IMG/VR virus record: IMGVR_UViG_3300048121_001678
Location: 186,001 to 250,000 of that record
Strand: one strand, 5' to 3'
Length of the DNA stretch: 64,000 nucleotides
The translations under genes were made by a program, and so were the position numbers. The notes below the pieces were generated by a model, which was not told the origin of the DNA, did not search any database, and saw only the letters and a program-made list of their open reading frames with translations. How positions within the stretch are numbered: the first letter of the stretch is position 1; each line of letters begins with the position of its first letter. This document shows positions 30,122 through 48,852 of this stretch, piece by piece.

Positions 30122-31996
30122 TTATTTAAGTAAGTTGTTTAATTTTTCTTCCATCTCACCTAATGAATCTCTACCTTTTGATAGGTCAATAGTCTCATCT
30201 TGACCGAACAATGTCGAATCTTCTAAGATTAAATCTAAGTCTTTATTTTTAACAAATGTCTCAGGTGCTAATTCGGGTTCACTACCAGTACCTACTTCAC
30301 CAGCGGGTTCACCACCTAAATCGCCACCTAAATCGCCACCTAAATCGCCACCGAAGTCACTACCCCCACCGAAGTCACCTCCACCACCAAAGTCGTCTCC
30401 TCCTTCAGTATCAGATTCACCTTCAGGTTTAGCATCTTTCTGTCCATATAGTTTGTCAAGGTTATCAAAGATACCTGTATTGACAATAACTTCTTGAGTT
30501 TTTTCTAACTCACCTGCGACCGCCCTTTCGATACGTTGTTGTTGTAGGTCAAGTTTGATTTCCTCATCAGAGAACCCAAGAATATGTTTCTTAGCCCATG
30601 ATGATGAAACAGGAAGGATACCATTACCTGGGTCAGTAGTTGCATCTCTATATAACTGAATCTTCTGTTGCCATTGTTCCACCTTCAACAAGTCCGCTTG
30701 TGACGATGGATTAGTTAAACCTAATGTGAAGTTTTGTAATTCATCTTCAAATCCTAAAATATATAAATGAATTATTGCTATCTTATTTAACTCTTGTACC
30801 ATAGACCTTTGTACTCTATTAATAGTTCGAGCGAAACGAATATCTTGTAGAGCCAAGTTCTTACCTTCACCTGTGACCTCCTCAAAACCTAAGAATGCCT
30901 TTGGTACTCTTAATGCTGTGAGTAATTTCTTTTGAATATACTCTATATCCGCAATTTCTGATAGGTTTGTAGCACCTGGTAAGGTATCTATCGGATTTGG
31001 AGAGTTAGGGTCTCTAACAGGTATAAAATAGTCTTGGTCTACGGCCATTTGGTTCATACGTAGGTCGACATTACCTGTTTGAGGGTCAGCAACTTGGTCA
31101 CGTTTGAACTTATTGGCAACTCTTTGTACATACGGTTCGACATCTTTGTCATCCATATTACCAACAAATACTTTAAACACCCTTCTTTCAGGTGCCCTAG
31201 ATGTTCTATATATTAACATAGCATCTTCAGAGAGAATAAGTTGTTTCCATATTCTTCTGGCTTTTTCCAACATAGAAGTCCCATAAGGAAGTTTACGGTC
31301 ATCACCCAATAATCTAAAGTGGGCAATTTCCCACGTATTGAATTCCATATCCTTAGCCTTCCATTTGAATTTTAACGCATCTTCGTCAGCATCTCCTGTT
31401 GGTTGTTGAATACCATATTGACCAGGTGAGGATTTCATTCCTCTTTCCAATCTTTCGATTTCAATGTTAGGTAATTGTTGTCCACCCACAATACCTTTTT
31501 CAGGGTCCAATTTCAAGTATACAAAGTTATCACCGTACTTAGCGGTGTTTCTTGTCCACATCGGTAAGTTAGTGTCTATATCTAATCTATTATTAAATAA
31601 ATCTGTTAGTACCGATTTAATTCTTTTACTCTCGGAAAAAACTTGTAATATGTAACCGTCTTCGTTAGCTGTTGTTGATTCCTCAGCGTATATATCAAGA
31701 GCCGCAGAAATTTCAGGTGTGAACTCCATACTCTCATAATCGTAAAACGCTGCCAGTCTTGTTGGTTCATAATATACCGCCTGAGTATATAAGTTATTTT
31801 CAACTTTTTGCCATTGTTGACCTAAGTATAGTGTTTGTTGTGCTTCAAGTTTTTCTCTATCATACTCCTCCTTATCACGTGTTTTTAATAATTCTTTCTT
31901 ATCAAAATTGTAAACAGGTGGCTGTTGGTCCAATGTTGAATCGGGACCAAATACTTTGGTTAATCTCTGCCAAACAGTAAAGTTATTTTCTGCCAT
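30122..31996 (-). CDS. portal protein (T4 gp20-like)
   Basis: EDAMLIYRTSRAPERRVF, DYFIP, IDTLPG, DIEYIQKKL..ALRVP. Confidence 0.93.
   Translation of the reverse strand: MAENNFTVWQRLTKVFGPDSTLDQQPPVYNFDKKELLKTRDKEEYDREKLEAQQTLYLGQQWQKVENNLYTQAVYYEPTRLAAFYDYESMEFTPEISAALDIYAEESTTANEDGYILQVFSESKRIKSVLTDLFNNRLDIDTNLPMWTRNTAKYGDNFVYLKLDPEKGIVGGQQLPNIEIERLERGMKSSPGQYGIQQPTGDADEDALKFKWKAKDMEFNTWEIAHFRLLGDDRKLPYGTSMLEKARRIWKQLILSEDAMLIYRTSRAPERRVFKVFVGNMDDKDVEPYVQRVANKFKRDQVADPQTGNVDLRMNQMAVDQDYFIPVRDPNSPNPIDTLPGATNLSEIADIEYIQKKLLTALRVPKAFLGFEEVTGEGKNLALQDIRFARTINRVQRSMVQELNKIAIIHLYILGFEDELQNFTLGLTNPSSQADLLKVEQWQQKIQLYRDATTDPGNGILPVSSSWAKKHILGFSDEEIKLDLQQQRIERAVAGELEKTQEVIVNTGIFDNLDKLYGQKDAKPEGESDTEGGDDFGGGGDFGGGSDFGGDLGGDLGGDLGGEPAGEVGTGSEPELAPETFVKNKDLDLILEDSTLFGQDETIDLSKGRDSLGEMEEKLNNLLK
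30312..30347. repeat. 12-bp tandem repeat x3 (GGDL) in the portal C-terminus
   Basis: CCACCTAAATCG x3 followed by degenerate GGDF copies. Confidence 0.85.
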
Positions 31997-32045: not shown

Positions 32046-33821
32046 TTATCTTCTACTTCCGAATAACCATAAATAGTTTTCATAATCACTTTTCGTTGCG
32101 TTACCTGTACGACCATTTCTATAGGGGTCATTTGGTAATGCCGACAGAGAAGGATTATAATTATCTACAGGGTTAGTTACCGGTGTTTCTTGCACATACC
32201 AACTATCAACCATTGCTTTAGTTTGTTCAGTCACTTTCTCTAAAGAAGTAAATGAATTTTCACCTACATATATCGCCATGGCCATTGCCATAATCAAATC
32301 ATCATGTTGTCCTTTTATGTGGTCAGGTCTACCGTTAACATAAACAAACGTATTTAATTCATTTAAAAGTCTTGTTGAACGAACCTTATAATCATGTCTT
32401 AAAGATTCCTCAAAGGAGGCAACAATTTGTACACGTTTACTATTGAAATTTAAACCAGGTATCTTTTCCATAGCCTTAGGGTTGTATTTCCATTTGTCCG
32501 CAGCATTCACACCTTCTACATATAAGTTTTGATACCCCATCTCTTGGAGTTTTCGGGACGTTGATACTCCCATACCTCCCGTAATATCAATAACCACAAA
32601 CGCATTATACATAGTTGCCCATTTAAATGCGATTTCAGCTGCAACATCAGGTGGTATTTTCCCTAAATACTCTAAAACTTGCTCCCTTTCATCAAAATCA
32701 ATAATACAAAACGTTGTGAAATCCTCACTGTCACCACGAGAAACGTCTATACCCATTATGTACTTATGATTAGCAATAGGTTCTTTCCATTGCCATAGTG
32801 AACCACCCATAAACTTATTCTCTGGCGGCATAATATGGTTTTCTTTTAACTTTTCAATAGTTTCATTAGGAATTACATTGTCACCTGAACCTAAAAAGTT
32901 ACACTCAAGCTCCTGAGAAATTTTTCTACGGTCAAACTTAAGTTTTTTAGCCATAGACTCAAACCAGCTGGAGTATGGTTTATATCCCTTATCAAAATGA
33001 TTTTTAATTTCTTCAAAATCTCTTTGTCTAGGGTCTATATGTGTATAATCAATAATAATTTCACTATCGTTATAGTCATCACGATTTAACATATAGTGTA
33101 TAATGTCCTTACACTTTATTAATTGTAAGTTTTTGGCGTATCTAGGGTCTTTATACCAATACATGTCGGTAATCTTAAAGTCATTCATCCCCCTTAATGC
33201 TTGGTCATAAATCGCATAATATATACGGTCAAAACCGTTAGGTGTTGATATTACGATTACTTTACCACCAGTAGATAGTGAAGCCATACATGCAGACCAA
33301 AAGTCATCATCGGCCTCAATAAACGCAGCTTCATCAAAAATAAGAATAGTAGGGGTATACCCACGCAGAGCATCTTTAGAAGTTGCAACCGCTTTAACCT
33401 CACATCCATTATTTAACTTAAAGTGTCTTTGTGAATTTTTTTCATTTGAAAATTTAACCCCTAACCAATCAGGCCATTGGTCAACAAAAGAACGTATCTT
33501 ATTTGCAAATTCCATAGACGTATCTAATTTATTTGCAATGATTAGTATCTTTTCTGGTTTACTCTTTTTAGCAGTAACTAATTTTTTAGACGACCAAGCT
33601 GCGGTAACTGTTGATACACCTGCTTGACGATATTTGATTGCGATATTTTCTTCAAAATTATCATAATCAAAAATTAACTTGTCTTGGTCAGGAAAAAGTT
33701 CGAGTGGTACGTAACGAGATTGTGTGTTGTCGTATGTTTGTAAGTATGTCTTTAATGCATATGACGTATCCTTAACTATTTTCGCGTATTCTACTAATGC
33801 TTTTTCTCTCGTTAAACCCAT
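32046..33821 (-). CDS. terminase large subunit (T4 gp17-like)
   Basis: KYRQAGVST, ILIFDEAAF, ISTPNG, QELEC.F.GS, GIDVSRG, HDDLIMA. Confidence 0.93.
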   Translation of the reverse strand: MGLTREKALVEYAKIVKDTSYALKTYLQTYDNTQSRYVPLELFPDQDKLIFDYDNFEENIAIKYRQAGVSTVTAAWSSKKLVTAKKSKPEKILIIANKLDTSMEFANKIRSFVDQWPDWLGVKFSNEKNSQRHFKLNNGCEVKAVATSKDALRGYTPTILIFDEAAFIEADDDFWSACMASLSTGGKVIVISTPNGFDRIYYAIYDQALRGMNDFKITDMYWYKDPRYAKNLQLIKCKDIIHYMLNRDDYNDSEIIIDYTHIDPRQRDFEEIKNHFDKGYKPYSSWFESMAKKLKFDRRKISQELECNFLGSGDNVIPNETIEKLKENHIMPPENKFMGGSLWQWKEPIANHKYIMGIDVSRGDSEDFTTFCIIDFDEREQVLEYLGKIPPDVAAEIAFKWATMYNAFVVIDITGGMGVSTSRKLQEMGYQNLYVEGVNAADKWKYNPKAMEKIPGLNFNSKRVQIVASFEESLRHDYKVRSTRLLNELNTFVYVNGRPDHIKGQHDDLIMAMAMAIYVGENSFTSLEKVTEQTKAMVDSWYVQETPVTNPVDNYNPSLSALPNDPYRNGRTGNATKSDYENYLWLFGSRR

Positions 33822-33840: not shown

Positions 33841-35124
33841 TTATGTTAAATCGATTCCAAGACCACCTAAAAAATCTCTAAACTCATCATCGTCTTCCTC
33901 ATCGTTTTCAATATCACCTAATGCATCTTCTAAATCATATTGACGTAATTCTTCAGTGATTTCATCAACCATTCTCTTAACTATCTTTTCACCTTTTTCT
34001 GAATTTGTCAAAATTTCTCTTGCAACTTCAAAGAACTCTTCAGTCGATAGTGCAGAAAAACGAGAAAATAAGTAATTCTGTATTTCTCTCATATCATCAG
34101 CAAATAAGTCTTCAGGGTAAGATTCGACAAATCTTTCCCAAATAACTGGACCTAACCTTAAATCCCAAATTTCGTATGGTAATGTGTCTTGAGAACCCAT
34201 AACCATTTCAGCAGCTTTAGGGTCATCAGGTAATCCCTGAGTACCTAATACTTCATAAACCCCTTTAATTAACTCATGTATTAATACAGGAAAGAAAAGT
34301 CCCTTGGCTTTGATTGTTGGTGGGTCAGTAGTTTCATCAACTTCTTCAGAACCTTGAACACCCTCACCTGAACCAGCCATCATTTGTGCCATTTGGTCAG
34401 GTACTATCCAATACATTAAATCAGCAATAGACATTAGTACACCATAAAGATTCAAAAGTTGTGGGTCTAAACGGTCCAATTCTTCACGAACTAAACTAAA
34501 CATATAATGACCCTTCTTTGATGCCCCCTGAATAAGAGAATTAATAAAACGTCTTTTTGCCTTTTCCATGTCAAACTTATCCATAGCATCCATGAATGCT
34601 TCAATATCGTCTTCCATGTCGTCAGAGTTTTCATCACCGAACATCTTCATAATATCTTCCTCATCAGGTTCTTCTGATGAAGGTCTCATCTTAGAAGTAT
34701 CAATCTGACCCATACCTGATAATAGCTCTACGTCGAATTGGAATGCATCGTCAGGAAGTGCCATTTCTTTCTTGACTAAGTCAATCGCTAAGTTTTCAAG
34801 ATACTCCTCGTTATCATTCTCAATAGATTTTACTTGTTGTACTGCTCGTTGCAACATCATTTGTAATTCCATAAGGGAGTTTTGATTAGAGATGTCAGTA
34901 ATACCAGTATAACGTTTAACTTTATCAACGACATCTTTAAACCTTTTTGATGCTAATAATTCTTCAAATGTAGAAACAACACCATCACCATCAATATCAA
35001 TATCTAAAGCAGGATTATCTGAAAGAGGTGTTTCACGACCCTGTATCTTCGCTTCAATATCTTGAGCCATTCTTTCTGGCCTGTTACCATAATCAATCGG
35101 TGCCTCTTTAATCTTCTTTTTCAT
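33841..35124 (-). CDS. hypothetical head-module protein
   Basis: 427-aa ORF; contains LIHELIKG. Confidence 0.7.
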   Translation of the reverse strand: MKKKIKEAPIDYGNRPERMAQDIEAKIQGRETPLSDNPALDIDIDGDGVVSTFEELLASKRFKDVVDKVKRYTGITDISNQNSLMELQMMLQRAVQQVKSIENDNEEYLENLAIDLVKKEMALPDDAFQFDVELLSGMGQIDTSKMRPSSEEPDEEDIMKMFGDENSDDMEDDIEAFMDAMDKFDMEKAKRRFINSLIQGASKKGHYMFSLVREELDRLDPQLLNLYGVLMSIADLMYWIVPDQMAQMMAGSGEGVQGSEEVDETTDPPTIKAKGLFFPVLIHELIKGVYEVLGTQGLPDDPKAAEMVMGSQDTLPYEIWDLRLGPVIWERFVESYPEDLFADDMREIQNYLFSRFSALSTEEFFEVAREILTNSEKGEKIVKRMVDEITEELRQYDLEDALGDIENDEEDDDEFRDFLGGLGIDLT

Positions 35125-36385
35125 CTCTAAATTTTATATTTAATGTGTTAAACTTTAAAAAGCTAGGTAATTCTTTTTTTCCTGCTTTAGGTGCTGGTTT
35201 GTGTTTTGGTTTGTAAGGTGTTTTTCTGTCTGGTTTTTCTTTAGTACCAGGTTTAACCCTTGTAGGTGCAGTCTTTGTGTCACCTGCTTTAGGGGCTGGT
35301 TTGTGTTTTGGTTTGTAAGGTGTCTTTCTTTCAGGTTTAGTTCTTGTAGGTGTCTTCACAGGAGCCTCCTTAGTACCAGGTGACTGTTCAGTTAAATTTA
35401 ATAAATCTTTTTTACTCATTCTCTTTGGTACGTATTTCTTAACCAAAGATACAATAGATTCTTCAATTTGTCTAATCTGTTCTTCCTTACTTTCTTTTTT
35501 AACACAATTAGGTACTTTCTTACCGAACATTGTTTTCATACCTTTCTTTTCGTAACCTTTCCAACACTTAGTCCCTTCATTGGTTTCTACTTTTTCAGGT
35601 AGCTTACTGAAATCTTTAGTGTCATCGGCAAACTCATCGGCCCTCTTACACCATTCAGATTTAGGACCCTCTTCCTCACACTTCACAAAGAAGTATTTTT
35701 GTTGTGATTTTGATTTAAATTCTTCATCAACTTCCTCACCCATCTCTGAACGATTATTATCGGAGTCATCATCCATACCATCAGGAGCCATATCATCTTC
35801 ATCATGTGGAGTTTCTTGACCTGTTAATTTTTTCATTGCTAAATCACCTAAAGCATTAGACGATGTTATGTTTTCATCTATTTCCCCATCATCAGATGCG
35901 GGTTCAAACATTTTCACTAACATGTTAAAATCATCTCTAAAGTAACTTCTTAAATAAGCTCTTTTACCATGTACTAATAGACTATCTCTATCTGTTTGGT
36001 ACTCTTCCCAATCATCCCAATAAAAATCAACCGCATCTTCAACGGCACTTTCAAGTTCAGGACTAAAAGGGCTTGGCATTTTTTCAGGCTCACCTAATTG
36101 TTTGTGAATTGATTGATTAAAAAAATGTTGGTCAGAACTACCCCACTCATTTAATTCCTCTTCAGAATCTTCTTCACCTACTAAGTCTATAGTCTTTTTA
36201 ATATCCTTCTGTAATTCGGCATTAACTTGTCTTAATTTTTGTACGCCAGCGACTTTATCAGTTAAACTTTCTTGTTCCCCAATTACTGCGTTATATAATG
36301 TATTGATTTGAGTTTCATTTAACATTTTTAATGACTCAAACTTAATACCTTTATTTAATAAACTTGAAATTTTTTTATTGTTCAT
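35108..36385 (-). CDS. modular late protein with CWKGY module and basic Pro/Lys repeats
   Basis: CWKGYEKKGMKTMFGKKVPNCVK; TPYKPKHKPAPKAG x2. Confidence 0.7.
   Translation of the reverse strand: MNNKKISSLLNKGIKFESLKMLNETQINTLYNAVIGEQESLTDKVAGVQKLRQVNAELQKDIKKTIDLVGEEDSEEELNEWGSSDQHFFNQSIHKQLGEPEKMPSPFSPELESAVEDAVDFYWDDWEEYQTDRDSLLVHGKRAYLRSYFRDDFNMLVKMFEPASDDGEIDENITSSNALGDLAMKKLTGQETPHDEDDMAPDGMDDDSDNNRSEMGEEVDEEFKSKSQQKYFFVKCEEEGPKSEWCKRADEFADDTKDFSKLPEKVETNEGTKCWKGYEKKGMKTMFGKKVPNCVKKESKEEQIRQIEESIVSLVKKYVPKRMSKKDLLNLTEQSPGTKEAPVKTPTRTKPERKTPYKPKHKPAPKAGDTKTAPTRVKPGTKEKPDRKTPYKPKHKPAPKAGKKELPSFLKFNTLNIKFRDEKED
35181..35323. repeat. 41-bp direct repeat (35181-35221, 35283-35323)
   Basis: CCTGCTTTAGG(T/G)GCTGGTTTGTGTTTTGGTTTGTAAGGTGT occurs twice. 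Confidence 0.85.
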
Positions 36386-36785
36386 GATTTATAATATTTT
36401 TTTCATATGTTAATATGATATCTCTTTCATATATCTTATCTTCCACTTCTTTAACAGTATCACCATATCTAAATACTAAACGAGTGAATTTATCTTCTGT
36501 TATGGCTGTAGTTTCACTATCTTCCCACGCTAAGGATATTACACCTTCCACCGCATCATAAACAGAGAAAAAATCTGAATTTTGGATTAAGTTTAACTCA
36601 ATACCTGAATTTCTTAATACTCCAACCTTCTTTATAAAATGAATAAGGGGTGGAGTTGGGTCACCACTAGCAGGTTCTTTATCCCAATCTTCACCCCATA
36701 CATCGTCAACGTCACTAAAAATAAACTCGTAAATATTATCCCCTTTAAAGTTGGGACCAAGTTCGTTAACGTATACTAAATTCAT
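36375..36785 (-). CDS. hypothetical protein
   Basis: Coupled ORF in the late operon. Confidence 0.75.
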   Translation of the reverse strand: MNLVYVNELGPNFKGDNIYEFIFSDVDDVWGEDWDKEPASGDPTPPLIHFIKKVGVLRNSGIELNLIQNSDFFSVYDAVEGVISLAWEDSETTAITEDKFTRLVFRYGDTVKEVEDKIYERDIILTYEKNIINHEQ

Positions 36786-37984
36786 AATAACTCACCCTTT
36801 TGAGAGACTTTAATCTGTTGACCGTCGTTCTCAAATACTAAGTTACCTTTGTTTGTCTTTCCTAAAAACTTAATTGTTTTGTTTTCTTTTAACAAAAAGT
36901 TTGCCGTCAATTCTTGCTCTACTGTTTCACACATTGACTTCATTTCTTTTCTTACCGTTACTTTTTGAATTTTTTCAGTAATAAAATTTTTGATATTTTT
37001 TGATTCAGTCAATGTTTTCTCTTCGTCACTAATTACGAAGTACTTTGATAATACTTTGTCGATTTTAGATTCTGCAAAGATTTCATCCATTACTTTCTCA
37101 CCTACTTCAGCCGATTCTTCCATTGGTTCTTCCATGTCCATATCTAAGTCCATGTCTAAGTCTAGTTCGTCACCCGCATCCACATCTAAGTCAGCCTCAT
37201 CGTCTACACCGTAGTCAATTTCGTCATCCTCAAAATTTTCTAAAATATCTTCTTTATCTTCTTCAGTTAACTTTTCTAAATCAACCGCTGAGATAATTGA
37301 GTTCAACACATATTTAATATCTTCAGAACTTAAACCATCTTGTTGGTCTATAGTTCTTAATTTTTGACCTAACTTACCTGTTAGTTTTTGAATTTCTTTG
37401 ATTGAGATTTCCTCTTCATCTGCAGGTGATTCAGCGTCTAAGTCTAAATCCATATCTAACTCTTCTTCACCACCTTCATCGTCCGTACCTAAGTCCATGT
37501 CTAAATCCATGTCTAAATCCATTTCTTCTTCACCACCTTCAGAACCCATGTCTAAATCTAAATCCATTTCTGGTTCCATTACAGGTTCTTCAACTTCAGG
37601 TTTAGGTGTTTTTAGTACAAACTTTTTTTCTTGTTCACCAAATAAATTTAAACCTTCATCATTTTCATGAAGTATATTCATTTCCTTAATAATCAAATTT
37701 AGTTTCTTCAGTGCCTTAGAATATGAAGAATGGTATCTTCTATTTTCTGCCGGCTCGTCATAAGTCATTTCAGATTCATTTAAACCTGATTTAATAATAT
37801 ACCCATTTTTTTCATGAATAATACTATAATATTTACCATCTGCTAATTGTCTAGTATAATCAACAGTTTCATTAACATTCATATCAGAACGCTCAGTATC
37901 GTTATAACGTGCAATTTCCATGATGCGTCTTAACTTTTCATCACCTTGTAATTTTTCACTTCCGATAGGTTTTAAATCTCCCAT
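36782..37984 (-). CDS. acidic hypothetical head-associated protein
   Basis: DLDMDLD low-complexity tracts similar to those of the scaffold. Confidence 0.7.
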   Translation of the reverse strand: MGDLKPIGSEKLQGDEKLRRIMEIARYNDTERSDMNVNETVDYTRQLADGKYYSIIHEKNGYIIKSGLNESEMTYDEPAENRRYHSSYSKALKKLNLIIKEMNILHENDEGLNLFGEQEKKFVLKTPKPEVEEPVMEPEMDLDLDMGSEGGEEEMDLDMDLDMDLGTDDEGGEEELDMDLDLDAESPADEEEISIKEIQKLTGKLGQKLRTIDQQDGLSSEDIKYVLNSIISAVDLEKLTEEDKEDILENFEDDEIDYGVDDEADLDVDAGDELDLDMDLDMDMEEPMEESAEVGEKVMDEIFAESKIDKVLSKYFVISDEEKTLTESKNIKNFITEKIQKVTVRKEMKSMCETVEQELTANFLLKENKTIKFLGKTNKGNLVFENDGQQIKVSQKGELL

Positions 37985-38222: not shown

Positions 38223-38972
38223 TTATAACTCGTTTTCTTGTTCCAACGATAGATTTTTGTCTACTAATTCATTGGTGAAGTCGAATAATTTTTGAATATA
38301 ACCATTACGTCTTAAAAATTTAAATACTAAGTTTTCGTAAGAGTATTCACCTTCTTTTTCCAAACCACAACTTCTATATTTTTTTAACCTTTCTTTTACT
38401 TTATCTATTATTTCTAACGCAGTATTTAAATCCTCATCTTTGGCATTACTAATAACTGTATCAATAATTTCCATCCATTGATTTGCCTTTTCAGTTAATT
38501 TTTTCTCATCGATAGACACACTTTCCTTAGTTGGTTCATTAATCCACTCATCATATAATACGGAGTATACTCCTGTTGAGAAATGTGGTTCTGATGAGTC
38601 CTGAACGTATAATTCCGCTTCATAACCTTTGACGAGAATATCGTGGGTGGAGTTAAATAACGTCTTTTTTAATTTAAATAATTCTTTATATAAATTTTTT
38701 TGTTCACCAGACTCGGTAAAGTCATATAGTATGTGTAAATCAATATCTGAGAATTCAGACCAATTATAATTGGACAGTGAACCTGTCATTGTAATATCAG
38801 AGACAAATATATCCAAACCTAAAAATTCTATGAATTCATTTGATATTTTTAGTAAGGTATCTCTAATTTCAGGTTTCATGGCGTATGAACCGCTACCGTC
38901 ATCATCCCATATTTTAGGATTTAATTCGTCCTGTATATAAAAACTTGAAATTATTTTATCTACCATCTCCAT
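38223..38972 (-). CDS. Pol-beta superfamily nucleotidyltransferase
   Basis: TGSLSNYNWSEFSDIDLH (GS...DxD) with a third acidic residue in ELYVQD. Confidence 0.75.
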   Translation of the reverse strand: MEMVDKIISSFYIQDELNPKIWDDDGSGSYAMKPEIRDTLLKISNEFIEFLGLDIFVSDITMTGSLSNYNWSEFSDIDLHILYDFTESGEQKNLYKELFKLKKTLFNSTHDILVKGYEAELYVQDSSEPHFSTGVYSVLYDEWINEPTKESVSIDEKKLTEKANQWMEIIDTVISNAKDEDLNTALEIIDKVKERLKKYRSCGLEKEGEYSYENLVFKFLRRNGYIQKLFDFTNELVDKNLSLEQENEL

Positions 38973-38994: not shown

Positions 38995-39243
38995 TTACTT
39001 TGTAAGTTTTTCGTATTTAAACTTCTTAGATATCTCAGTATTAAAATATCTACCCTGTGATTCTGATAGTCTAAATTTAGTGTAAACTTTGTGTGGTACG
39101 TCTTCGTACTTATACTCTGTACCGTTTTTAAAGGTAACGGTTAAGGTCTTTTCTTCTAAATGATAAACGGTTTTACTAAGATTGGAAGAATTAATCTCAT
39201 TGATGATTTGTTTACCTACGATTTTTTCACTTTTGATTGCCAT
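38995..39243 (-). CDS. KTSC domain protein
   Basis: SSNL..VY...LTVTFKNG..Y.YEDVP......SESQGRYFN. Confidence 0.85.
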   Translation of the reverse strand: MAIKSEKIVGKQIINEINSSNLSKTVYHLEEKTLTVTFKNGTEYKYEDVPHKVYTKFRLSESQGRYFNTEISKKFKYEKLTK

Positions 39244-39541: not shown

Positions 39542-39586
39542 ACCAATAAATATAAAAAAACCCCGATTTCTCAGGGTTTTTAACAT

Positions 39587-39940
39587 TTACGACTCTAATT
39601 TTTTAATTTCGTCTCTTATTTTAATTGAACTTTCAAAGTCTTCCTTATCAATTGACTCTTGAAGTTTTAATTTCAACTCCCTGATTTTTTCTCCGTTCTT
39701 CTCGATAGATTTAATTTTATCTCGAAACTCAACAGCCGATTCAAAATCTTGTTTTTCAACCGCATCCTGAAGTTTATTGTTAAGAATTGTTAGTTCATCA
39801 TTTGTTTGATTATCACCATTAAGGGAATATGTGAAATAAACCTGATTAGGACCTACTTTATAATAAGTTGGTTTTTGATTGTCAAATAAAGATTCGAACT
39901 CTCTTAAAAATTGGTCAAACATACTTTTTTTGTTAAACAT
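39587..39940 (-). CDS. tandem UvrB/UvrC (UVR) motif protein
   Basis: LQDAVEKQDFESAVEFRDKIK and LQESIDKEDFESSIKIRDEIK. Confidence 0.85.
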   Translation of the reverse strand: MFNKKSMFDQFLREFESLFDNQKPTYYKVGPNQVYFTYSLNGDNQTNDELTILNNKLQDAVEKQDFESAVEFRDKIKSIEKNGEKIRELKLKLQESIDKEDFESSIKIRDEIKKLES

Positions 39941-40020
39941 AGTGTTAAATTTAAAAATTTTATTATCTTTGTGTTTAAATAAGTAAAAAACGTACCATTT
40001 CAAAAAAACTGATTATACAA

Positions 40021-40033
40021 TGACATAATGTCA
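40021..40033. promoter_or_regulatory. palindromic operator/enhancer-like site TGACA-N3-TGTCA
   Basis: Perfect inverted repeat between the divergent UVR and clpC genes; extra TGACA at 40052. Confidence 0.5.
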
Positions 40034-40130
40034 GTTAAATTAAATAAAACCTGACAATTTTAGTATTCATGTTTTTTGTAAGGTAAAATGTCTTATATTT
40101 GTAGTAACATAAAAAAACAAAAAATAGATT

Positions 40131-42146
40131 ATGATAGAATCAGTTGACCCGAACGATAGTTCAAAAGGAAAGAAAGATAGATTACCTAAGTCTGGTACAC
40201 CAGTATTAGACAACTTTTCACGTGATTTAATTAAACATGCAGAACAAGGTAAGTTAGACCCTGTTGTTGGTCGTGACCGTGAAATTGAGCGTATTGCACA
40301 AATCCTCTCTCGTAGAAAGAAAAATAACCCTATTATCATTGGTGAACCAGGTTGTGGTAAGACAGCAATCATTGAGGGATTGGCCATGAAAATATATGAA
40401 GGTGATTGTCCTCGTAATTTATCAGATAAACGTATCGTGTCCTTAGATATGACATCAATCGTTGCAGGTACAAAGTATCGTGGACAATTTGAGGAACGTC
40501 TAAAGGTAATCTTAGATGAGTTATACGATAATCCAGATATCATTGTATTCATTGATGAAATACATACTATCATCGGAGCCGGTAACTCATCAGGTTCCTT
40601 AGATGCCTCAAATATCTTTAAACCGGCACTTGCACGTGGTGAACTACAATGTGTTGGTGCAACTACACTCGATGAGTATCGTGAAAATATTGAAAAAGAT
40701 GGAGCGTTAGAACGTCGTTTTCAGAAGGTTATGGTTGATGGGGCATCACCTGAAGAAACAATGATTATCTTACAGAATCTTAAATCACGTTACGAATCAC
40801 ATCATAAGGTATCTTACTCAGATGACTCTTTAGAAGCGTGTGTGTACTTAGCTGACCGTTACATTACTGACAGAGCATTTCCAGATAAAGCAATCGATAT
40901 TTTAGATGAGGTTGGTGCTCGTAGTCAAATCTCCGTGAAATTACCTGAAGAAATTGAAAAACTTAAAGACGAGGCAAATGTCATTAAATTGGAGAAAATC
41001 GATGTAGTTAAAGCACAGGACTATGAGAAAGCAGCACACCTTAGAGATAAGGAAAAGAAAATCCTTAAAGAATTGGATAAAGTTAAAATTGAGTTTGAAA
41101 ATAAGCAAGATGAGGAACGTAAACCAATTACTGAAGATATGGTATATGAAGTTGTCGCAAATATGACTAAAATACCTGTATCTAAACTTAATCAAAACGA
41201 AATGGAAGGATTGTTAGATTTAGAAAACAACCTTAATCAAACGGTAATTGGTCAAGAACCTGCAGTTAAGAAGATTTCTAAAGCAATACGTAGAAACCGT
41301 GTCGGTATTAAAGACCCAAGTCGCCCAATCGGTTCATTCATCTTCTTAGGTTCCACAGGTGTAGGTAAAACACACTTAGCTAAAAAATTGGCAAAAGAAA
41401 TTTTTGGAGATGAAGAGGCACTGATTAGAGTAGATATGTCTGAATACCAAGAAAAGTATACGATGTCACGTCTTATTGGTTCCCCTCCAGGTTATGTAGG
41501 TCATCAAGAAGGTGGACAACTAACTGAGAAAGTTAAAAATAAACCATATTCAGTAGTACTGTTTGATGAGATTGAAAAGGCAAATAAAGACATCTTCTCA
41601 CTTCTATTACAAGTTTTAGATGACGGTCACCTAACCGATAGTTTCGGTCGTAAAATCAACTTCAAAAACTGTTTAATTATTATGACATCAAACTTAGGTG
41701 TTAAGAAACTACAGGATTTCGGTGCAGGTGTTGGGTTTGACACAACTGCAAGAATTAGTGGTGACGAGGACCTTAAAAAGGCTCTTTTACAAAAAGAACT
41801 TAAGAATCACTTCACACCTGAATTCTTAAATCGATTAGATGAAGTAATTGTGTTCAACCCACTAAAAGAAAACGAAGTACGTCAGATTGTAGATATTGAG
41901 TTATCAAAACTAAATCAACGTTTAGAGAGGCTTGGGTATCACATTAACTTTACTGATGAAATTAAAACCATGTTAGGTGAAGTAGGTTATGATGAGAAAT
42001 ATGGGGCAAGACCAATCAAAAGAGCTATCCAAGAAAAGATTGAGGATTACATCTCTGAGGAAGTACTACGTCAAAATATCAAAATCGGACGTAACTACGA
42101 ACTTAAGTTTGTAGATGAAGAAGTGAAAATTGAGGAGGGGGGTTAA
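40131..42146 (+). CDS. clpC: ClpC-type AAA+ unfoldase lacking the N-domain
   Basis: GEPGCGKT/FIDEIH, UVR-like M-domain, GSTGVGKT/LFDEIEKA, GVGF ClpP-docking loop; TATATTTG at 40094. Confidence 0.9.
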   Translation: MIESVDPNDSSKGKKDRLPKSGTPVLDNFSRDLIKHAEQGKLDPVVGRDREIERIAQILSRRKKNNPIIIGEPGCGKTAIIEGLAMKIYEGDCPRNLSDKRIVSLDMTSIVAGTKYRGQFEERLKVILDELYDNPDIIVFIDEIHTIIGAGNSSGSLDASNIFKPALARGELQCVGATTLDEYRENIEKDGALERRFQKVMVDGASPEETMIILQNLKSRYESHHKVSYSDDSLEACVYLADRYITDRAFPDKAIDILDEVGARSQISVKLPEEIEKLKDEANVIKLEKIDVVKAQDYEKAAHLRDKEKKILKELDKVKIEFENKQDEERKPITEDMVYEVVANMTKIPVSKLNQNEMEGLLDLENNLNQTVIGQEPAVKKISKAIRRNRVGIKDPSRPIGSFIFLGSTGVGKTHLAKKLAKEIFGDEEALIRVDMSEYQEKYTMSRLIGSPPGYVGHQEGGQLTEKVKNKPYSVVLFDEIEKANKDIFSLLLQVLDDGHLTDSFGRKINFKNCLIIMTSNLGVKKLQDFGAGVGFDTTARISGDEDLKKALLQKELKNHFTPEFLNRLDEVIVFNPLKENEVRQIVDIELSKLNQRLERLGYHINFTDEIKTMLGEVGYDEKYGARPIKRAIQEKIEDYISEEVLRQNIKIGRNYELKFVDEEVKIEEGG

Positions 42147-42162
42147 ATAAAACCCCTTCCTA

Positions 42163-42194
42163 TTTGGAAAAACAAAATATAGTTATTATATTTG
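42163..42194 (+). promoter_or_regulatory. Bacteroidota-type promoter
   Basis: TTTG-N20-TATATTTG. Confidence 0.75.
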
Positions 42195-42211
42195 TATCAA
42201 ATAATTAAGAA

Positions 42212-43291
42212 ATGGAAAATAAAACAGTAGAAAGATTTAAAGAACTCTTATCCGTACCTTCAAAAACATACGAAGAGGACCAAATGGTAGAATACATATC
42301 ATCGGTACTAGATAGTATTGAGGGAGTCGAGTACTACACTGATGAGATGAATAACATCTACGCAACAAAACGACAAAGTGGATTTCGTGGTAAATTTCCA
42401 ATGTTTGTTGCTCATACTGACACTGTCCATAACTTAGTACCCGAAATCATTGTTGAGGAAAAAACACTTCCCAAACCACCAACATTTGGACGAACTTTTG
42501 ATGAAACTCAATACGACGTTCTAAAGGCCTATACCCCTGATGGTAACCCAACAGGTATTGGCGGTGACGATAAGTGTGGTATCTTCATTTGTTTGGAACT
42601 ACTACGAACACTATCAAATGTAAAAGTAGGACTATTCGTTTCTGAAGAAACGGGGTGTCACGGTTCAAGTAAATGTGATGTAAAATTCCTCAACGATGTA
42701 GGGTATATTGTACAATACGACGCACCCGGTAACCATCTTATTACTGAGTTATGTTCGGGTATCCGCCTATTTGAGGAAAAAGGGGATTTTATTAACCGAG
42801 CACTACCTGTAATTGAGAGAACCATGGAAACAAATATGGAATTACAATCTCACCCATACACTGACGTTTCACAACTGAAGAAAAAGAGTGATGTATCCTG
42901 TATTAATATTTCTTGTGGGTATTACGAGATGCACAGCTCAAATGAGTTTATCGTATTGGATGATGTAGATAAATCCATCAGAACAGGGATTAACTTAGTC
43001 AACGAGTTCGGATACGAAAAGCAAGAATACGCCTACGAACCACCAGTATACTCTTATGGGGGTTTGTTTAATCTTGATGATGTAGAAAATGACTTAGATG
43101 ATTGGGACGAATCCCTGTTAGATGGATTAAGTGACACTTTCGATTTAGAAGATAATGTGGTTGAGTTCGAATTTGGTGGAATAACTATTCAGAGCAAACA
43201 TACAGATGACACCATTTATATGGATGAATCTGACTCGGTAAAACTCTATGAACTTATCAGAGAAAATCTACTACTCAAAGGGGTCGAATAA
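42212..43291 (+). CDS. M20/M28 family Zn metallopeptidase
   Basis: AHTDTVH, GGDDKCG, EETGCHGS, QYD, YYEMH. Confidence 0.8.
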   Translation: MENKTVERFKELLSVPSKTYEEDQMVEYISSVLDSIEGVEYYTDEMNNIYATKRQSGFRGKFPMFVAHTDTVHNLVPEIIVEEKTLPKPPTFGRTFDETQYDVLKAYTPDGNPTGIGGDDKCGIFICLELLRTLSNVKVGLFVSEETGCHGSSKCDVKFLNDVGYIVQYDAPGNHLITELCSGIRLFEEKGDFINRALPVIERTMETNMELQSHPYTDVSQLKKKSDVSCINISCGYYEMHSSNEFIVLDDVDKSIRTGINLVNEFGYEKQEYAYEPPVYSYGGLFNLDDVENDLDDWDESLLDGLSDTFDLEDNVVEFEFGGITIQSKHTDDTIYMDESDSVKLYELIRENLLLKGVE

Positions 43292-45127
43292 CTGGTAGTT
43301 ACTCATCATTGACAAAAGAGAGGAAAGTTTCGACTTTCCTTTTTTTGTTTCAAAAGAATCTGTTTCAGGGTTATACCTATTAAGTGTGAACATAACCTTA
43401 TTAGTTTCAGGGTCTACACGGTCAACCTTAACATTTATATTATCCGTAGTTGGTATCTTTCTATATTTTCCGAAGTCACCGAATTTTTCTTTGACTTGTC
43501 CAATTATTTCTAAGTTTTTGTCAAAATCTAAAAAGAACTCGGCGTCATTTAATTTTTCCCACTCCTTTTCAAGTATAAAATCCAAATCACTATCAAACAT
43601 AGTCCTAAATGATTTATCATCAAAATGACCGTACACTAAATCAGTTGGGTAGTCAATAGGGAACGATACATTATTTGAAACGACTTCTTTTAACATATCA
43701 GATAAGTTTAAATCAGTAAGGTATTCACTGGATTCATATAATTTTATTAAATCAGATAAGTCGATATTGTACTCATAAAAACAATTTGAGCTGTCTTTAC
43801 TTTCAAAGCCAATGTCAGAAAGTAAGTCACATAAAAGACTACTAAACTCCTCCTGTGCGGCAATTATCATACCTTCGTTCATTGCCATAGAATAGGTTTC
43901 CCCTAGTGAATCCATAAATGAATCATCTAAATTATCAGACATAAATTTTGATATTTTCTTATCATCACCATCTTCTATGATATATTTTCCATTTTCATCC
44001 TTTATTAATTTGGAAATTTCAGGATTATAAACCTCAATGATTTCTTTTAAGATTGATAACTGTTCGTTGTTAAAGTAATTTAATACGTATCCATCACTGA
44101 AGTCTTCATCAAAATTATATGAATCATAAAGGTCTAATTCAGAACCATAAGGTGGGTCAATAACTGTACCAATGAAACTTAAATCATTTTCATCAACATC
44201 CTCTTCAAATAAATTTAAAAAGTCATAAATACCATCAAATTTAATATTAACATCATAATTATCATCACCTGATTTTTTTATTCCACCTAAATGGGGACTT
44301 TGTATTCTTCCTCTCACGTGGTCAATTTTACCTTCTAATATACCTTTTAGTGTTTCGTAATGTTTGTTTCCCTTAACCAATTTTCTAATTTCTTCTTGAA
44401 TCGGTGAAAACCTATCTAATAATACATCAACACTTCTAATACCGTCTCTTTGGTCATATACTTCCGTTTTACCGTCGTTTCTAACTAATAATGCCATCTT
44501 ACCCCATGTTGAGTCATTCGATTTCTTATCGATTATGTAATATAGGTTTCCTTCATCGGAGTATTTGTCAAAATATCTAGTGTCTCCTTTACTGGTGGTA
44601 CACCATTTTGTGTTTCGACCATAATAACATGATGCCCCGTGAGTGTATGGTTGAACAATTAAAAATCTATTGTCTTCATATATCCTATCAGACTCGTTTT
44701 TGGCTCCCCTTTCTTTTTCTTTTTGAACATTTCTTAAATATACTGCGTTTAAAACCGCTTGAAGTCCCCAAATAGAATCGTATTTATTAATATCTTTAGG
44801 ACCATTCAGAATCTTATTACCGTTTACCAATGATGAAGTAGTTTCGGCATATGTGATATCTTCAGGTGTGATGGATGATGACAACTTATGGAACTTTTCA
44901 ATAAGTTCAATGAAAAGATTTACATTGTCGGCAATTGAATATGTTAGTGGGTTTCCCAAACCAATCATTTGTTTAATCATCCACTCAGAGTATTTTTTTG
45001 TTGGTGATGGGTCACCATCAATAAGTTTTTCTAGTAACTCAACCGCATCGACAAATGTTTCAGTATCTTTGTACTTATCAATTAAGGTTTCTTTCTTACC
45101 CTCAAGTAAAATGTTGATGAATTTCAT
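43271..45127 (-). CDS. large hypothetical late protein (ASCYYG..TKWCT domain)
   Basis: 618-aa ORF with INILLE leader and TATTTAT at 45141-45147. Confidence 0.7.
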   Translation of the reverse strand: MKFINILLEGKKETLIDKYKDTETFVDAVELLEKLIDGDPSPTKKYSEWMIKQMIGLGNPLTYSIADNVNLFIELIEKFHKLSSSITPEDITYAETTSSLVNGNKILNGPKDINKYDSIWGLQAVLNAVYLRNVQKEKERGAKNESDRIYEDNRFLIVQPYTHGASCYYGRNTKWCTTSKGDTRYFDKYSDEGNLYYIIDKKSNDSTWGKMALLVRNDGKTEVYDQRDGIRSVDVLLDRFSPIQEEIRKLVKGNKHYETLKGILEGKIDHVRGRIQSPHLGGIKKSGDDNYDVNIKFDGIYDFLNLFEEDVDENDLSFIGTVIDPPYGSELDLYDSYNFDEDFSDGYVLNYFNNEQLSILKEIIEVYNPEISKLIKDENGKYIIEDGDDKKISKFMSDNLDDSFMDSLGETYSMAMNEGMIIAAQEEFSSLLCDLLSDIGFESKDSSNCFYEYNIDLSDLIKLYESSEYLTDLNLSDMLKEVVSNNVSFPIDYPTDLVYGHFDDKSFRTMFDSDLDFILEKEWEKLNDAEFFLDFDKNLEIIGQVKEKFGDFGKYRKIPTTDNINVKVDRVDPETNKVMFTLNRYNPETDSFETKKGKSKLSSLLSMMSNYQLFDPFE

Positions 45128-48401: not shown

Positions 48402-48458
48402 TTTGTTATTAGAAAAAAAGTATTTATATTTGTACTCAGAAACAAAAGTTCTTTGAAA
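48402..48458 (+). promoter_or_regulatory. tmRNA promoter plus boxA-like element
   Basis: TTTG-N19-TATATTTG followed by GTTCTTTGAAA. Confidence 0.7.
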
Positions 48459-48462: not shown

Positions 48463-48852
48463 GGGGGTGAATGGAATTGATTGGCAGGGTCAGTTGCACG
48501 GGGCACGTAGTGAGATGTTATCTATCACTTTAATCTATGATGGCAATTTTGTAATCGGCGAAACTTTCGCAAAACTTCAGGCAGTAGGTCTCCTACGTAC
48601 TGAAGAAGTAGCTGTAGCGTAAGACGTTAACAGTGAATCGGGTCGGTCAGGACATGTACCTATGAACAGAAGTCCGTTGTTGTGGTGGAAAAACGATTAA
48701 ACCCTAAATTGAGTCGTACATCTATTGGTGATAGAGGATGTAAAAATTCAATCACATATTTCGGAACATTGTGAACTAATGTTGACCTAAACGTGTAGTC
48801 CTTTGTAGGTGGACTGAACAAGACGCGGGTTCGAATCCCGCCACCTCCACCA
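48463..48852 (+). ncRNA. ssrA: tmRNA
   Basis: 5' GGGGGTG pairs with CACCTCC-ACCA 3' (G3.U wobble); T-arm GCGGGTTCGAATCCCGC; internal tag ORF 48557-48622. Confidence 0.93.

What the first reader, a model, noticed from the sequence alone, without database searches (positions are those of the whole stretch)
39587..43291. Phage proteostasis module: tandem-UVR protein, N-domain-less ClpC and metallopeptidase
Seen: ClpC starts directly at the linker before AAA-1 (no Clp-N repeats) yet keeps the UVR-type M-domain and the VGF ClpP-docking loop. The divergent gene is little more than two UVR coiled coils. An M20/M28 peptidase follows clpC. No clpP is in the window. Known: ClpC N-domains recruit adaptors and substrates, M-domain head-to-head contacts set the resting state, and UVR-containing partners (e.g. 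McsA) contact ClpC. Inference: an unfoldase insulated from host adaptors and switched by its own UVR adaptor, which redirects host ClpP toward chosen targets such as defence proteins.
Basis: partly seen in the sequence, partly recalled or inferred. Interest (0 to 1): 0.7.

Follow-up and report, generated by a model that had tools for sequence, protein, structure and literature searches.

The report
Jumbo-phage ClpC–ClpP protease with UVR partner
A 297-kb marine phage that probably infects Bacteroidota carries its own protein-degrading machine: a ClpC unfoldase that naturally lacks its regulatory N-domain, its own ClpP elsewhere in the genome, a small two-UVR-motif partner candidate and an aminopeptidase-like enzyme; the genes are real, conserved and transcribed, but how they work together is still inferred.

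Summary
Window 39587-43291 encodes a 117-aa tandem-UVR protein (-), a 671-aa ClpC lacking Clp_N but keeping both ATPase modules, pore loops, the UVR-type M-domain (tip Tyr298) and the GVGF ClpP loop (+), and an MH-clan metallopeptidase (+).

The N-less form is not a truncation. All about 80 close phage relatives start at the same MIES… N-terminus, and more distant jumbo and huge phages are N-less too.

The interpretation needs one correction. The genome (297 kb, 99% complete) has its own bona fide clpP about 50 kb from clpC, outside the window, and it is transcribed. In one distant relative the N-less clpC stop overlaps the clpP start.

Within the clade, 16 of 16 ClpP+ records carry the UVR protein and 4 of 4 ClpP- records lack it. 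These give only two independent contrasts. In other relatives an Hsp20 sits in the UVR slot.

Published work shows that ΔN-ClpC self-inhibits through M-domain head-to-head contacts. A UVR "capper" is therefore plausible but untested; complex prediction gave no answer. Nothing supports defence proteins as targets.

A conserved phage tmRNA lies 6 kb downstream. I rate this a new variant of a known kind, interest about 0.6.

The parts
39587..39940 (-). Tandem-UVR protein gene. It encodes 117 aa from the ATG at 39940, and the stop is included. The product has an N-terminal Phe-rich helix, a beta-hairpin and three helices carrying two UVR motifs (QDFESAVEFRD, EDFESSIKIRD).
   Evidence: Pfam UVR x2, E = 4e-15. 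The family alignment is A1. 493 metagenomic relatives were found. The AF2 model shows helices at 45-62, 66-98 and 102-116 with pLDDT about 80. RNA contigs span 39614-39949 at depth about 100.
39556..39581 (-). Terminator-like hairpin directly after the UVR gene's stop codon. It suggests a monocistronic transcript.
   Evidence: Pattern scan. RNA contigs stop at about 39614-39617.
39941..40130 (.). Divergent intergenic region between the UVR gene and clpC. It carries a Bacteroidota-type -7 element, TTATATTTG, at 40093-40101, 30 nt before the clpC ATG.
   Evidence: Sequence and motif hits. RNA depth is about 0 over 40005-40165, and a clpC contig starts at 40132.
40131..42146 (+). ClpC-like double-ring AAA+ unfoldase without the Clp_N domain (671 aa). 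D1 Walker A is GEPGCGKT. The M-domain spans about 262-335 with tip Tyr298. D2 Walker A is GSTGVGKT. The ClpP-docking loop is G533-V-G-F536.
   Evidence: No Clp_N in the genome. It is the only AAA_2 protein in the genome. RNA contigs cover it.
42163..42194 (+). Promoter-like site TTTG-N20-TATATTTG in front of the peptidase gene.
   Evidence: RNA contigs for the peptidase start at 42214-42225.
42212..43291 (+). MH-clan (M20/M42-like) di-metal exopeptidase-like protein of 359 aa. The catalytic domain spans about 1-270. An acidic linker and a small C-terminal domain follow; the short (about 275 aa) homologues in relatives lack both.
   Evidence: RNA contigs span 42214-43320.
48463..48852 (+). Phage tmRNA gene. 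It is an associated element, not proven to be part of the module. It encodes a 21-aa tag, GETFAKLQAVGLLRTEEVAVA. The same TTATATTTG element lies at 48424-48432.
   Evidence: ARAGORN. Rfam RF00023 at 82.5 bits, E = 1.8e-30. It is present 2.5-8 kb downstream of clpC in all 12 related records tested. The tag frame is conserved.

Best explanation
The locus is the unfoldase side of a phage-encoded ClpC-ClpP protease in a marine jumbo phage that probably infects Bacteroidota.

Shown:
- The ClpC is a complete, conserved, transcribed double-ring AAA+ unfoldase that naturally lacks the N-domain.
- The same genome encodes a canonical, transcribed ClpP. This ClpC is the only Clp-type ATPase in the genome.
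- In a distant relative the N-less clpC and clpP form an overlapping operon.

Inferred:
- ClpC docks on phage ClpP through its GVGF loops and feeds it substrates recognised by the pore, because the adaptor-docking N-domain is missing.
- Engineered S. aureus ΔN-ClpC binds ClpP but locks itself into inactive head-to-head ring dimers and rods through the M-domain tip aromatic. It becomes constitutively active when that contact is broken. On that basis, the divergently transcribed tandem-UVR protein most likely binds the UVR-type M-domain tip (Tyr298). That would keep or switch the phage ClpC-ClpP into the active single-hexamer form. Its N-terminal Phe-rich segment may also hold substrates.
- The neighbouring MH-clan exopeptidase then trims ClpP's peptide products to amino acids.
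- The likeliest overall role is bulk or quality-control proteolysis and amino-acid recycling during a very large phage's replication. It may be fed in part by the phage's own tmRNA tag. A defence-specific weapon is less likely.
For: ClpC anatomy and conservation:
- N-less ClpC is conserved in 80 of 80 close loci, and again in the huge phages LR756502, LR745206 and LR756508.
- It also occurs on 248-254-kb phage-like contigs that sit in MAGs beside full-length host ClpC.

ClpP:
- The genome's own ClpP scores PF00574 E = 2e-57 and PDB ClpP 1.6e-46.
- It scores 235 bits against the NCBIfam ClpP model but only 71 bits against the head-maturation protease model.
- A separate head-maturation protease exists in the window.
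- ClpC is the only AAA_2 protein in the genome.
- One relative has a clpC-clpP operon with overlapping stop and start. In another, clpP lies 1.2 kb from clpC.

Transcription:
- Gene-shaped metatranscriptome contigs cover the UVR gene, clpC, the peptidase and clpP. The flanks are silent.

UVR link:
- The two genes form a divergent pair.
- UVR motifs occur only in this protein and in the ClpC M-domain.
- 16 of 16 ClpP+ in-clade records have the UVR protein and 4 of 4 ClpP- records lack it.
- In G039 the UVR gene has moved away from clpC but is retained.
- The same slot holds an Hsp20 chaperone in other relatives.

Published mechanism:
- Jenne et al. 2025 (PMC12583610).

Peptidase:
- Invariant candidate ligands and a PepT/TET-like fold.
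Against: - No direct evidence shows that the UVR protein binds ClpC. The complex prediction gave no answer.
- The UVR-ClpP co-occurrence rests on only two phylogenetically independent contrasts (sign test p = 0.5).
- More distant ClpP+ phages with N-less ClpC have no UVR protein. The UVR protein therefore cannot be generally required.
- The whole region is syntenic across the clade, so adjacency partly reflects common descent.
- clpP lies about 50 kb from clpC in this genome.
- The substrates are unknown.
- The module sits next to the head and packaging genes, which leaves room for a morphogenetic role.
Confidence: 0.55

Rival explanations
1. The N-less ClpC is a host-takeover or counter-defence device. 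Its private UVR adaptor selects specific host proteins, such as defence proteins, and feeds them to the host's ClpP.
For: - ClpP-less relatives, including a 322-kb record rated 100% complete, keep the G(V/I)GF ClpP loop. They would have to use host ClpP if they degrade at all.
- Loss of the N-domain removes the known docking site for host adaptors. This rests on established ClpC biology and on PMC12583610.
- There is a precedent for phage manipulation of ClpCP: SPO1 Gp53 (PMC6873191, listed).
Against: - This phage, and 16 of 16 UVR-bearing relatives with enough sequence, carry their own ClpP. The UVR protein is therefore found with phage ClpP, not in the phages that would depend on host ClpP.
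- No defence-related neighbour or target signal was found.
- The UVR protein's N-terminal part is short and variable, and in this phage it lacks the beta insert that relatives have.
Confidence: 0.2
2. The ClpC acts mainly as a stand-alone chaperone or unfoldase for virion morphogenesis. It could, for example, handle the acidic scaffold-like or internal proteins encoded next door. The UVR or Hsp20 protein would act as a holdase, and ClpP and the peptidase would be unrelated.
For: - The module lies 4-6 kb from terminase, portal, head protease and major capsid genes, and beside highly acidic low-complexity proteins.
- Iyer et al. 2021 suggested such roles for phage Clp ATPases.
- Four relatives have ClpC without ClpP.
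- An Hsp20 holdase occupies the partner slot in some relatives.
Against: - The ClpP-docking loop is strictly conserved in about 80 homologues.
- There is a clpC-clpP operon in a relative.
- Pure chaperone Hsp100s (ClpB, ClpL) lack this loop (established knowledge).
Confidence: 0.12
3. The tandem-UVR protein is not a ClpC factor at all. It is a generic coiled-coil protein that happens to sit there, or it targets host UvrB/UvrC or the host ClpC M-domain.
For: - UVR motifs mediate UvrB-UvrC contacts (established knowledge).
- NCBIfam gives weak hits to the UvrB and UvrC C-terminal motifs.
- Adjacency is confounded by clade-wide synteny.
- No complex was predicted, which is not evidence either way.
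Against: - The slot is specifically exchanged between the UVR protein and an Hsp20 chaperone at least 6 times on the ClpC tree.
- The protein is retained with ClpP in 16 of 16 records, even when relocated.
- The genome has no other UVR-motif protein apart from ClpC.
Confidence: 0.13

Closest known systems
ClpC of Firmicutes (B. subtilis / S. aureus ClpC-ClpP with MecA, McsB)
   Same: About 55% identity over both AAA+ modules, the UVR-type M-domain and the ClpP loop. The M-tip aromatic is kept: Tyr298 at the position of Phe436.
   Different: It has no N-terminal Clp_N domain, so MecA-, pArg- or ClpS-type docking is not possible. It is encoded by a phage. Its candidate partner is a tandem-UVR protein, not MecA or McsB.
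Engineered ΔN-ClpC of S. aureus (Jenne et al. 2025, PMC12583610)
   Same: The same architecture: linker, D1, M-domain, D2. The engineered protein loses the resting state, binds ClpP and forms M-domain-dependent ring dimers and rods. ΔN-F436A is constitutively active and degrades an ssrA-tagged substrate.
   Different: The engineered protein is a laboratory truncation. Here the form is natural, conserved across hundreds of phage contigs and accompanied by candidate partner genes. Its assembly behaviour has not been tested.
McsA (protein-arginine kinase activator) and chloroplast ClpF, the known UVR-motif proteins of Clp systems
   Same: Each is a small protein with a UVR motif, encoded or acting alongside ClpC.
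   Different: This protein has no zinc-finger or Cys residues and no McsB partner. It scores 42.6 bits against the 210-bit McsA cut-off. It has two UVR motifs in tandem, and no YccV domain (ClpF comparison from memory).
Clp genes already catalogued in jumbo phages (Iyer et al. 2021, PMC7824862; 'moraphages', Perez-Hernandez et al. 2025, PMC12619734)
   Same: Phage ClpP, ClpA/ClpX-like ATPases and ClpS are listed. In aquatic jumbo phages of 200-307 kb predicted to infect Bacteroidota, a ClpA-like ATPase and a 'putative peptidase' are core orthologous groups, and some genomes have Hsp20.
   Different: Those papers give one-line catalogue entries. They do not mention the missing N-domain, the UVR partner, the UVR/Hsp20 slot, the ClpP co-occurrence or a tmRNA ('tmRNA' occurs 0 times in PMC12619734).
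M42 TET aminopeptidases / M20B peptidase T
   Same: The fold matches at Foldseek probability 1.00, and the H-x-D … D … E-E … D … H ligand pattern is present.
   Different: Identity is only 12-16%. It has no full PDZ-like (M42) or lid (M20) domain. It has an extra acidic C-terminal extension. Its oligomeric state is unknown.

Membership tests
ClpC (class I Hsp100/Clp ATPase) | Two AAA+ modules with Walker A/B and pore loops | tested here: met
   Pfam AAA, AAA_lid_9 and AAA_2 (E = 1e-65). Residue-level alignment to 6em8. The motifs are invariant in about 80 homologues.
ClpC (class I Hsp100/Clp ATPase) | Short coiled-coil M-domain with a UVR-like motif and a tip aromatic | tested here: met
   UVR hit at 287-312. 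QDY298EKAAHLRD aligns to S. aureus QEF436ENAANLRD.
ClpC (class I Hsp100/Clp ATPase) | ClpP-docking (I/V/L)-G-F loop in D2 | tested here: met
   F530-GAGVGF-536, conserved as G(V/I)GF in all close homologues.
ClpC (class I Hsp100/Clp ATPase) | N-terminal double Clp_N repeat domain | tested here: not met
   No PF02861 in the protein or anywhere in the genome. The alignment starts at residue 151 of S. aureus ClpC.
ClpC (class I Hsp100/Clp ATPase) | ATP-dependent substrate delivery to ClpP | not testable with these tools
   The only evidence is genomic: a ClpP in the same genome and an operon in a relative.
ClpP (peptidase S14), gene outside the window | Full-length S14 fold with a Ser-His-Asp triad, distinct from ClpP-like prohead proteases | tested here: met
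   PF00574 positions 5-181 of 182, E = 2e-57. The motifs AAS123MG, LH148Q and RD197L are invariant. It scores 235 bits against NCBIfam ClpP versus 71 bits against the head-maturation model. A separate head protease lies at window 27433-28152.
McsA | N-terminal CxxC zinc fingers plus a C-terminal UVR domain, scoring above the family cut-off | tested here: not met
   Only the UVR part matches (profile positions 139-171 of 182), at 42.6 bits against a 210-bit cut-off. The 117-aa sequence contains no Cys.
Hsp20 / alpha-crystallin (for the UVR protein) | Alpha-crystallin domain | tested here: not met
   None of the 18 family members gives an HSP20 hit. hhalign of A1 against the slot Hsp20s (A3) gives probability 3.5%.
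MH-clan metallopeptidase (M20/M28/M42) | Co-catalytic metal ligands H, D, E, D/E, H plus a catalytic Glu | tested here: met
   H68, D119, E145/E146, D170 and H241 are invariant in 17 homologues. They align to the PepT motifs GADDKAG, GEESG and EEIH.
MH-clan metallopeptidase (M20/M28/M42) | Family-specific second domain (M20 lid/dimerisation domain or M42 PDZ-like domain) | tested here: inconclusive
   The model shows only a short two-strand insert at 80-107. TM-scores of 0.45-0.57 do not separate M20B from M42. Pfam M42 is just above its cut-off.
tmRNA (RF00023) | Full-length covariance-model match above the gathering score, with a tag reading frame | tested here: met
   82.5 bits against a 47-bit gathering score, model positions 1-374. 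The ARAGORN tag is conserved in 12 relatives.

The most novel reading that the evidence does not exclude
The tandem-UVR protein is a new class of Hsp100 regulator: an M-domain decoy. By capping the Tyr298 tips it would stop a naturally N-less ClpC from polymerising with ClpP into inactive head-to-head rods, and so license a phage-private protease. An Hsp20 would be an interchangeable alternative partner in sister phages. The phage tmRNA's unusually long, conserved tag (…K-L-x3-G-L-x-R-T-E-E-V-A-V-A) would serve as a private degron, read directly by the N-less pore.
Probability: 0.25. Interest if true: 0.8.

Novelty: new variant of a known kind. Interest (0 to 1): 0.6.

Why it matters
ClpC regulation is a current drug-target problem. 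The N-domain and the M-domain together hold the enzyme in a resting state, and a 2025 study showed what happens when the N-domain is removed artificially.

Here nature has made the same deletion in a large, globally distributed group of marine and aquatic jumbo phages. It has paired the N-less ClpC with a phage ClpP and a small protein made almost entirely of the motif that forms the M-domain tip.

If that protein does control M-domain contacts, it would be a compact, genetically encoded switch for Hsp100 proteases. It would also show how a phage runs its own proteolysis independently of host adaptors.

Even without that, the data show that these phages carry a multi-part protein-turnover kit: unfoldase, peptidase barrel, exopeptidase, tmRNA and sometimes an sHSP. 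That kit bears on how very large phages manage protein quality and amino-acid supply in nutrient-poor water.

Tried and rejected
1. Complex prediction of ClpC with the UVR protein gave a score of 0.06 and the verdict 'no answer'. I do not use it as evidence in either direction.
2. A frameshifted or separate N-domain is rejected. There is no Clp_N in the genome, and only 190 bp of intergenic DNA lie upstream of clpC.
3. ClpP as the prohead protease is rejected. A dedicated head-maturation protease is present, and the ClpP scores as cellular-type.
4. I tested whether the UVR protein is a remodelled Hsp20, because their N-termini look alike by eye. Profile-profile comparison gave no support (probability 0.9-3.5%). 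I keep only the positional equivalence.
5. The statistical test of UVR-ClpP linkage found only 2 independent contrasts (p = 0.5), so the linkage is reported as suggestive only.
6. The sigma-70 promoter scan found fewer sites than the shuffles. The Bacteroidota-type motif TTTG-N17-21-TAnnTTTG is enriched instead, 13 sites against 3.6 expected.
7. I tried to confirm 'moraphage' membership through class-II LysRS (PF00152). It is absent, so membership is left open. Their 'Lys-tRNA ligase' orthologous group may in fact be the KTSC protein next to this module (my inference).
8. No SmpB is encoded, so the phage tmRNA would depend on host SmpB.
9. DNA-level searches of isolated phages found only ClpC-derived matches and no close cultured relative.


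Full report
**What the window is.** The window is G000:C1:186001-250000 of a 297,164-bp IMG/VR virus record that CheckV rates 99% complete. GC content is about 32%. It carries a major head protein (23931-25661, -), a head-maturation protease (27433-28152, -), a portal (30122-31996, -) and a large terminase (32046-33821, -). It is therefore a tailed jumbo phage. Near-identical DNA occurs in many seawater, marine and estuary metagenomes.

**Checking the observation.**
- **UVR gene.** The ORF is 39587-40003 (-). Its real start is the ATG at 39940, because every homologue begins 'MF…' there. The product is 117 aa with two Pfam UVR motifs (E = 4e-15). An AlphaFold model built on an 18-sequence alignment gives an N-terminal helix, a beta-hairpin and three helices at 45-62, 66-98 and 102-116. 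pLDDT is about 80 in the helical part and 68 overall.
- **ClpC.** The gene is 40131-42146 (+), 671 aa. From residue 15 it aligns to residue 151 of S. aureus ClpC (E = 1.6e-228), which is directly after that protein's N-domain. Both Walker A/B pairs, the KYRG and GYVG pore loops, the M-domain (QDY298EKAAHLRD against S. aureus QEF436ENAANLRD) and the ClpP loop (GAGVGF, 531-536) are present.
- **No hidden N-domain.** No Clp_N domain exists anywhere in the genome. Only 190 bp separate clpC from the divergent gene.
- **Peptidase.** The gene is 42212-43291 (+). It scores above the Pfam M42 cut-off and matches phrog_4191 'peptidase' at 6e-37. H68, D70, D119, E145, E146, D170 and H241 are invariant in 17 homologues. 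A confident model (pLDDT 84.8) matches peptidase T (M20B) and TET (M42) aminopeptidases at Foldseek probability 1.00.

**The N-less ClpC is a conserved natural form.**
- A scan of IMG/VR found 428 related stretches. The best 80 (70-100% identity) all start with the same MIES(V/M)D… N-terminus and are 670-690 aa long. Every catalytic motif is invariant or near-invariant.
- The 484-642-kb huge phages LR756502, LR745206 and LR756508 also have N-less ClpC of 657-707 aa.
- Jumbo-phage-sized contigs of 248 and 254 kb, binned into Flavobacteriaceae and Bacteroidetes MAGs, have it too. In those MAGs, and in two further Bacteroidota MAGs, it occurs beside a full-length (848-858 aa) host ClpC.
- Among the 150 best 50%-identity representatives of 1.8 billion proteins, nearly all are at least 800 aa and have the N-domain. 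Only about eight are N-less.

**The key correction: the phage has its own ClpP.**
- A ClpP gene lies at G000:C1:275727-276386, about 50 kb from clpC and outside the window (PF00574 E = 2e-57).
- It is a full-length cellular-type ClpP with Ser-His-Asp. Its best PDB hit is at 1.6e-46. It scores 235 bits against the NCBIfam ClpP model and only 71 bits against the head-maturation model.
- ClpC is the only AAA_2-type ATPase in the genome, so it is the only phage-encoded candidate partner for that ClpP.
- In a more distant relative (G040) the N-less clpC stop codon overlaps the clpP start. In another (G046) clpP lies 1.2 kb downstream of clpC.
- 'Redirecting host ClpP' is therefore not the best reading for this phage.
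- Four relatives with adequate coverage lack ClpP, one of them a 322-kb record rated 100% complete. They still keep the G(V/I)GF loop. Use of host ClpP remains plausible for those.

**Host.**
- The ClpP has the Bacteroidota-type N-terminal extension, and its best NCBIfam model is NF011091.
- A pattern scan of 185,579 species genomes returned only Bacteroidota ClpPs at 44-51% identity, apart from one Flexilinea contig. The 59-84% hits were on MAG or single-cell contigs, mostly binned as Bacteroidota and some phage-like.
- The Bacteroidota promoter pattern TTTG-N17-21-TAnnTTTG is enriched in the window: 13 sites against 3.6 expected, and 0 of 100 shuffles reach 13.
- The element TTATATTTG sits 20-40 nt upstream of clpC, the peptidase gene and the tmRNA gene.
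- A 2025 paper describes aquatic jumbo phages of 200-307 kb predicted to infect Flavobacteriia. Their core genes include a ClpA-like ATPase and a 'putative peptidase', and some encode Hsp20 (PMC12619734). This is probably the same or a neighbouring lineage, but I could not confirm membership.

**Transcription.** Contigs from four marine or estuary metatranscriptomes cover the genes in gene-shaped blocks.

| Stretch | Contig coverage | Depth |
|---|---|---|
| UVR gene | 39614-39949 | about 100 in two runs |
| clpC | 40132-42090, in pieces | 3-28 |
| peptidase | 42214-43320 | 8-90 |
| clpP | L001:1415-2021 | up to about 45 |
| intergenic | 40005-40165 | at or near zero |
| neighbouring gene | 43386-43868 | at or near zero |
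| clpP flank | L001:1-1300 | near zero; one 8-deep contig at 376-583 in X16 |

- The silent stretches argue against DNA carry-over.
- The boundaries fit separate transcription units: a terminator-like hairpin follows the UVR gene, and the peptidase has its own promoter-like site.
- Contig depths are a poor measure of expression, so I do not rank the genes by depth.

**The UVR protein and its slot.**
- The family has 493 metagenomic cluster representatives. Most are about 145 aa, and JGI auto-names them 'McsA' or 'UvrB' on the motif alone.
- In the 80 close loci, the position divergent from clpC holds the tandem-UVR protein in 58. It holds an Hsp20 small heat-shock protein of 121-128 aa in 10. 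In 12 it holds neither (nothing, or an unrelated small ORF).
- A distant relative also has Hsp20 in that slot (Pfam E = 6e-19).
- The slot state changes at least 6 times on the ClpC tree.
- This genome has no Hsp20. The eight UVR-bearing records tested also lack one.
- The two protein families are not detectably homologous.
- A chaperone-type holdase alternating with the UVR protein beside clpC supports the idea that the slot encodes a ClpC co-factor. That is an inference.

**Co-occurrence with ClpP.**
- Among in-clade records (ClpC at least 66% identical) with enough sequence, 16 of 16 ClpP+ records carry the UVR protein. In one of them the UVR gene has moved 48 kb from clpC and lies 12.5 kb from clpP.
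- 4 of 4 ClpP- records lack the UVR protein.
- Only two contrasts are phylogenetically independent (p = 0.5).
- More distant ClpP+ phages have no UVR protein.
- The link is therefore suggestive, not established.

**Mechanism.**
- Jenne et al. 2025 (PMC12583610) worked with S. aureus ClpC.
  - Deleting the N-domain destabilises the resting state and lets ClpC bind ClpP.
  - The hexamers then pair head-to-head through the M-domain tip (Phe436) and polymerise with ClpP into rods that cannot degrade substrates.
- The phage ClpC is a natural ΔN-ClpC with the tip aromatic retained (Tyr298, conserved as Tyr or Phe).
- A small protein made of two copies of the same motif, each with the equivalent Phe (QDFESAV…, EDFESSI…), is an obvious candidate to occupy those tips. 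It could either activate or regulate the enzyme.
- This step is inferred. The one structure-based test I could run returned 'no answer'.
- The exopeptidase next door would plausibly finish ClpP's peptide products (inference from the fold).

**tmRNA.**
- A full-length tmRNA gene lies at 48463-48852 (ARAGORN; Rfam 82.5 bits, E = 1.8e-30).
- It is present 2.5-8 kb downstream of clpC in all 12 relatives tested, ClpP+ and ClpP- alike.
- Its 21-22-aa tag frame is conserved: G(E/N)(T/V)xxK(L/M)xxxGLx(R/K)(T/Q)… ending in VAVA, VYAA, VSVA, ISVA or VTVA.
- No SmpB is encoded.
- ssrA-type tags are read by the Hsp100 pore rather than the N-domain (PMC12583610). A functional tie to the N-less ClpC is therefore attractive but untested.

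**Verdict.**
It is right about an adaptor-blind ClpC with a likely private UVR partner. It is wrong about dependence on host ClpP in this phage. It is unsupported on defence targets.
- Phage Clp components have been catalogued before. The natural N-less architecture, the tandem-UVR/Hsp20 partner slot, its tie to phage ClpP and the linked tmRNA appear not to have been described in the papers I could search.
- I rate it a new variant of a known kind, with interest 0.6.

Noticed in passing
window 48463-48852 (+): Phage-encoded tmRNA (Rfam 82.5 bits) with a long, conserved 21-aa tag, GETFAKLQAVGLLRTEEVAVA. It is present near clpC in all 12 relatives tested. No SmpB gene is in the genome. tmRNAs in huge phages are known, but this tag and its linkage to ClpC are not described in the papers I searched.
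   Followed up: partly
outside the window: L001:2756-3334 (-) = G000:C1 about 277105-277683: A 193-aa bacteriorhodopsin-like protein (Pfam PF01036, E = 3.7e-14) lies 0.7 kb from clpP. It has RYLDWTFTVP…Q (a D-T-Q pattern) and a helix-G Lys (DLTAKLG). A rhodopsin in a tailed phage genome is unusual. One metatranscriptome contig covers part of it. A thioredoxin gene lies at L001:344-640 (-).
   Followed up: partly
L227:1765-5380 (G046:C1:63265-66880): In a distant relative, the N-less clpC is interrupted at the D2 Walker A motif (GVGK|C…SHN|T) by an intein-like insert of about 1.6 kb. The reading frame is broken inside the insert. A thymidylate-synthase gene and clpP follow.
   Followed up: no
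L226:2491-5183 (G040:C1:78490-81182): In another distant jumbo phage, the N-less clpC and clpP form an operon in which the clpC stop overlaps the clpP start.
   Followed up: yes
window 38995-39243 (-) and 38223-38972 (-): A KTSC-domain protein (82 aa, Pfam E = 4e-18) and a nucleotidyltransferase-fold protein (phrog_36119) are conserved just upstream of the UVR/ClpC pair in nearly all relatives. The function of this pair is unknown. The 'Lysine-tRNA ligase' core group reported for moraphages may be this KTSC protein.
   Followed up: no
window 35108-36385 (-) and 36782-37984 (-): Two highly acidic, low-complexity proteins lie between the terminase and the ClpC module. One has D/E-rich (DLDM)n repeats and one has a KP-rich repeated C-terminus. 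They may be scaffold or internal head proteins.
   Followed up: no
window 40093, 42186, 45179, 48424, 61297 (+): The element TTATATTTG (Bacteroidota -7 type, TAnnTTTG) recurs 20-40 nt upstream of clpC, the peptidase gene, a small ORF, the tmRNA gene and another ORF. The count is 7 sites against 3.1 expected, and 4 of 100 shuffles reach 7. This may mark a shared promoter class.
   Followed up: partly
window 43271-45127 (-): A 618-aa protein of unknown function (weak phrog_17056 and phrog_28193 hits at residues 134-209) is conserved downstream of the peptidase and overlaps its 3' end by 21 nt. It is essentially silent in the metatranscriptomes that cover its neighbours.
   Followed up: no
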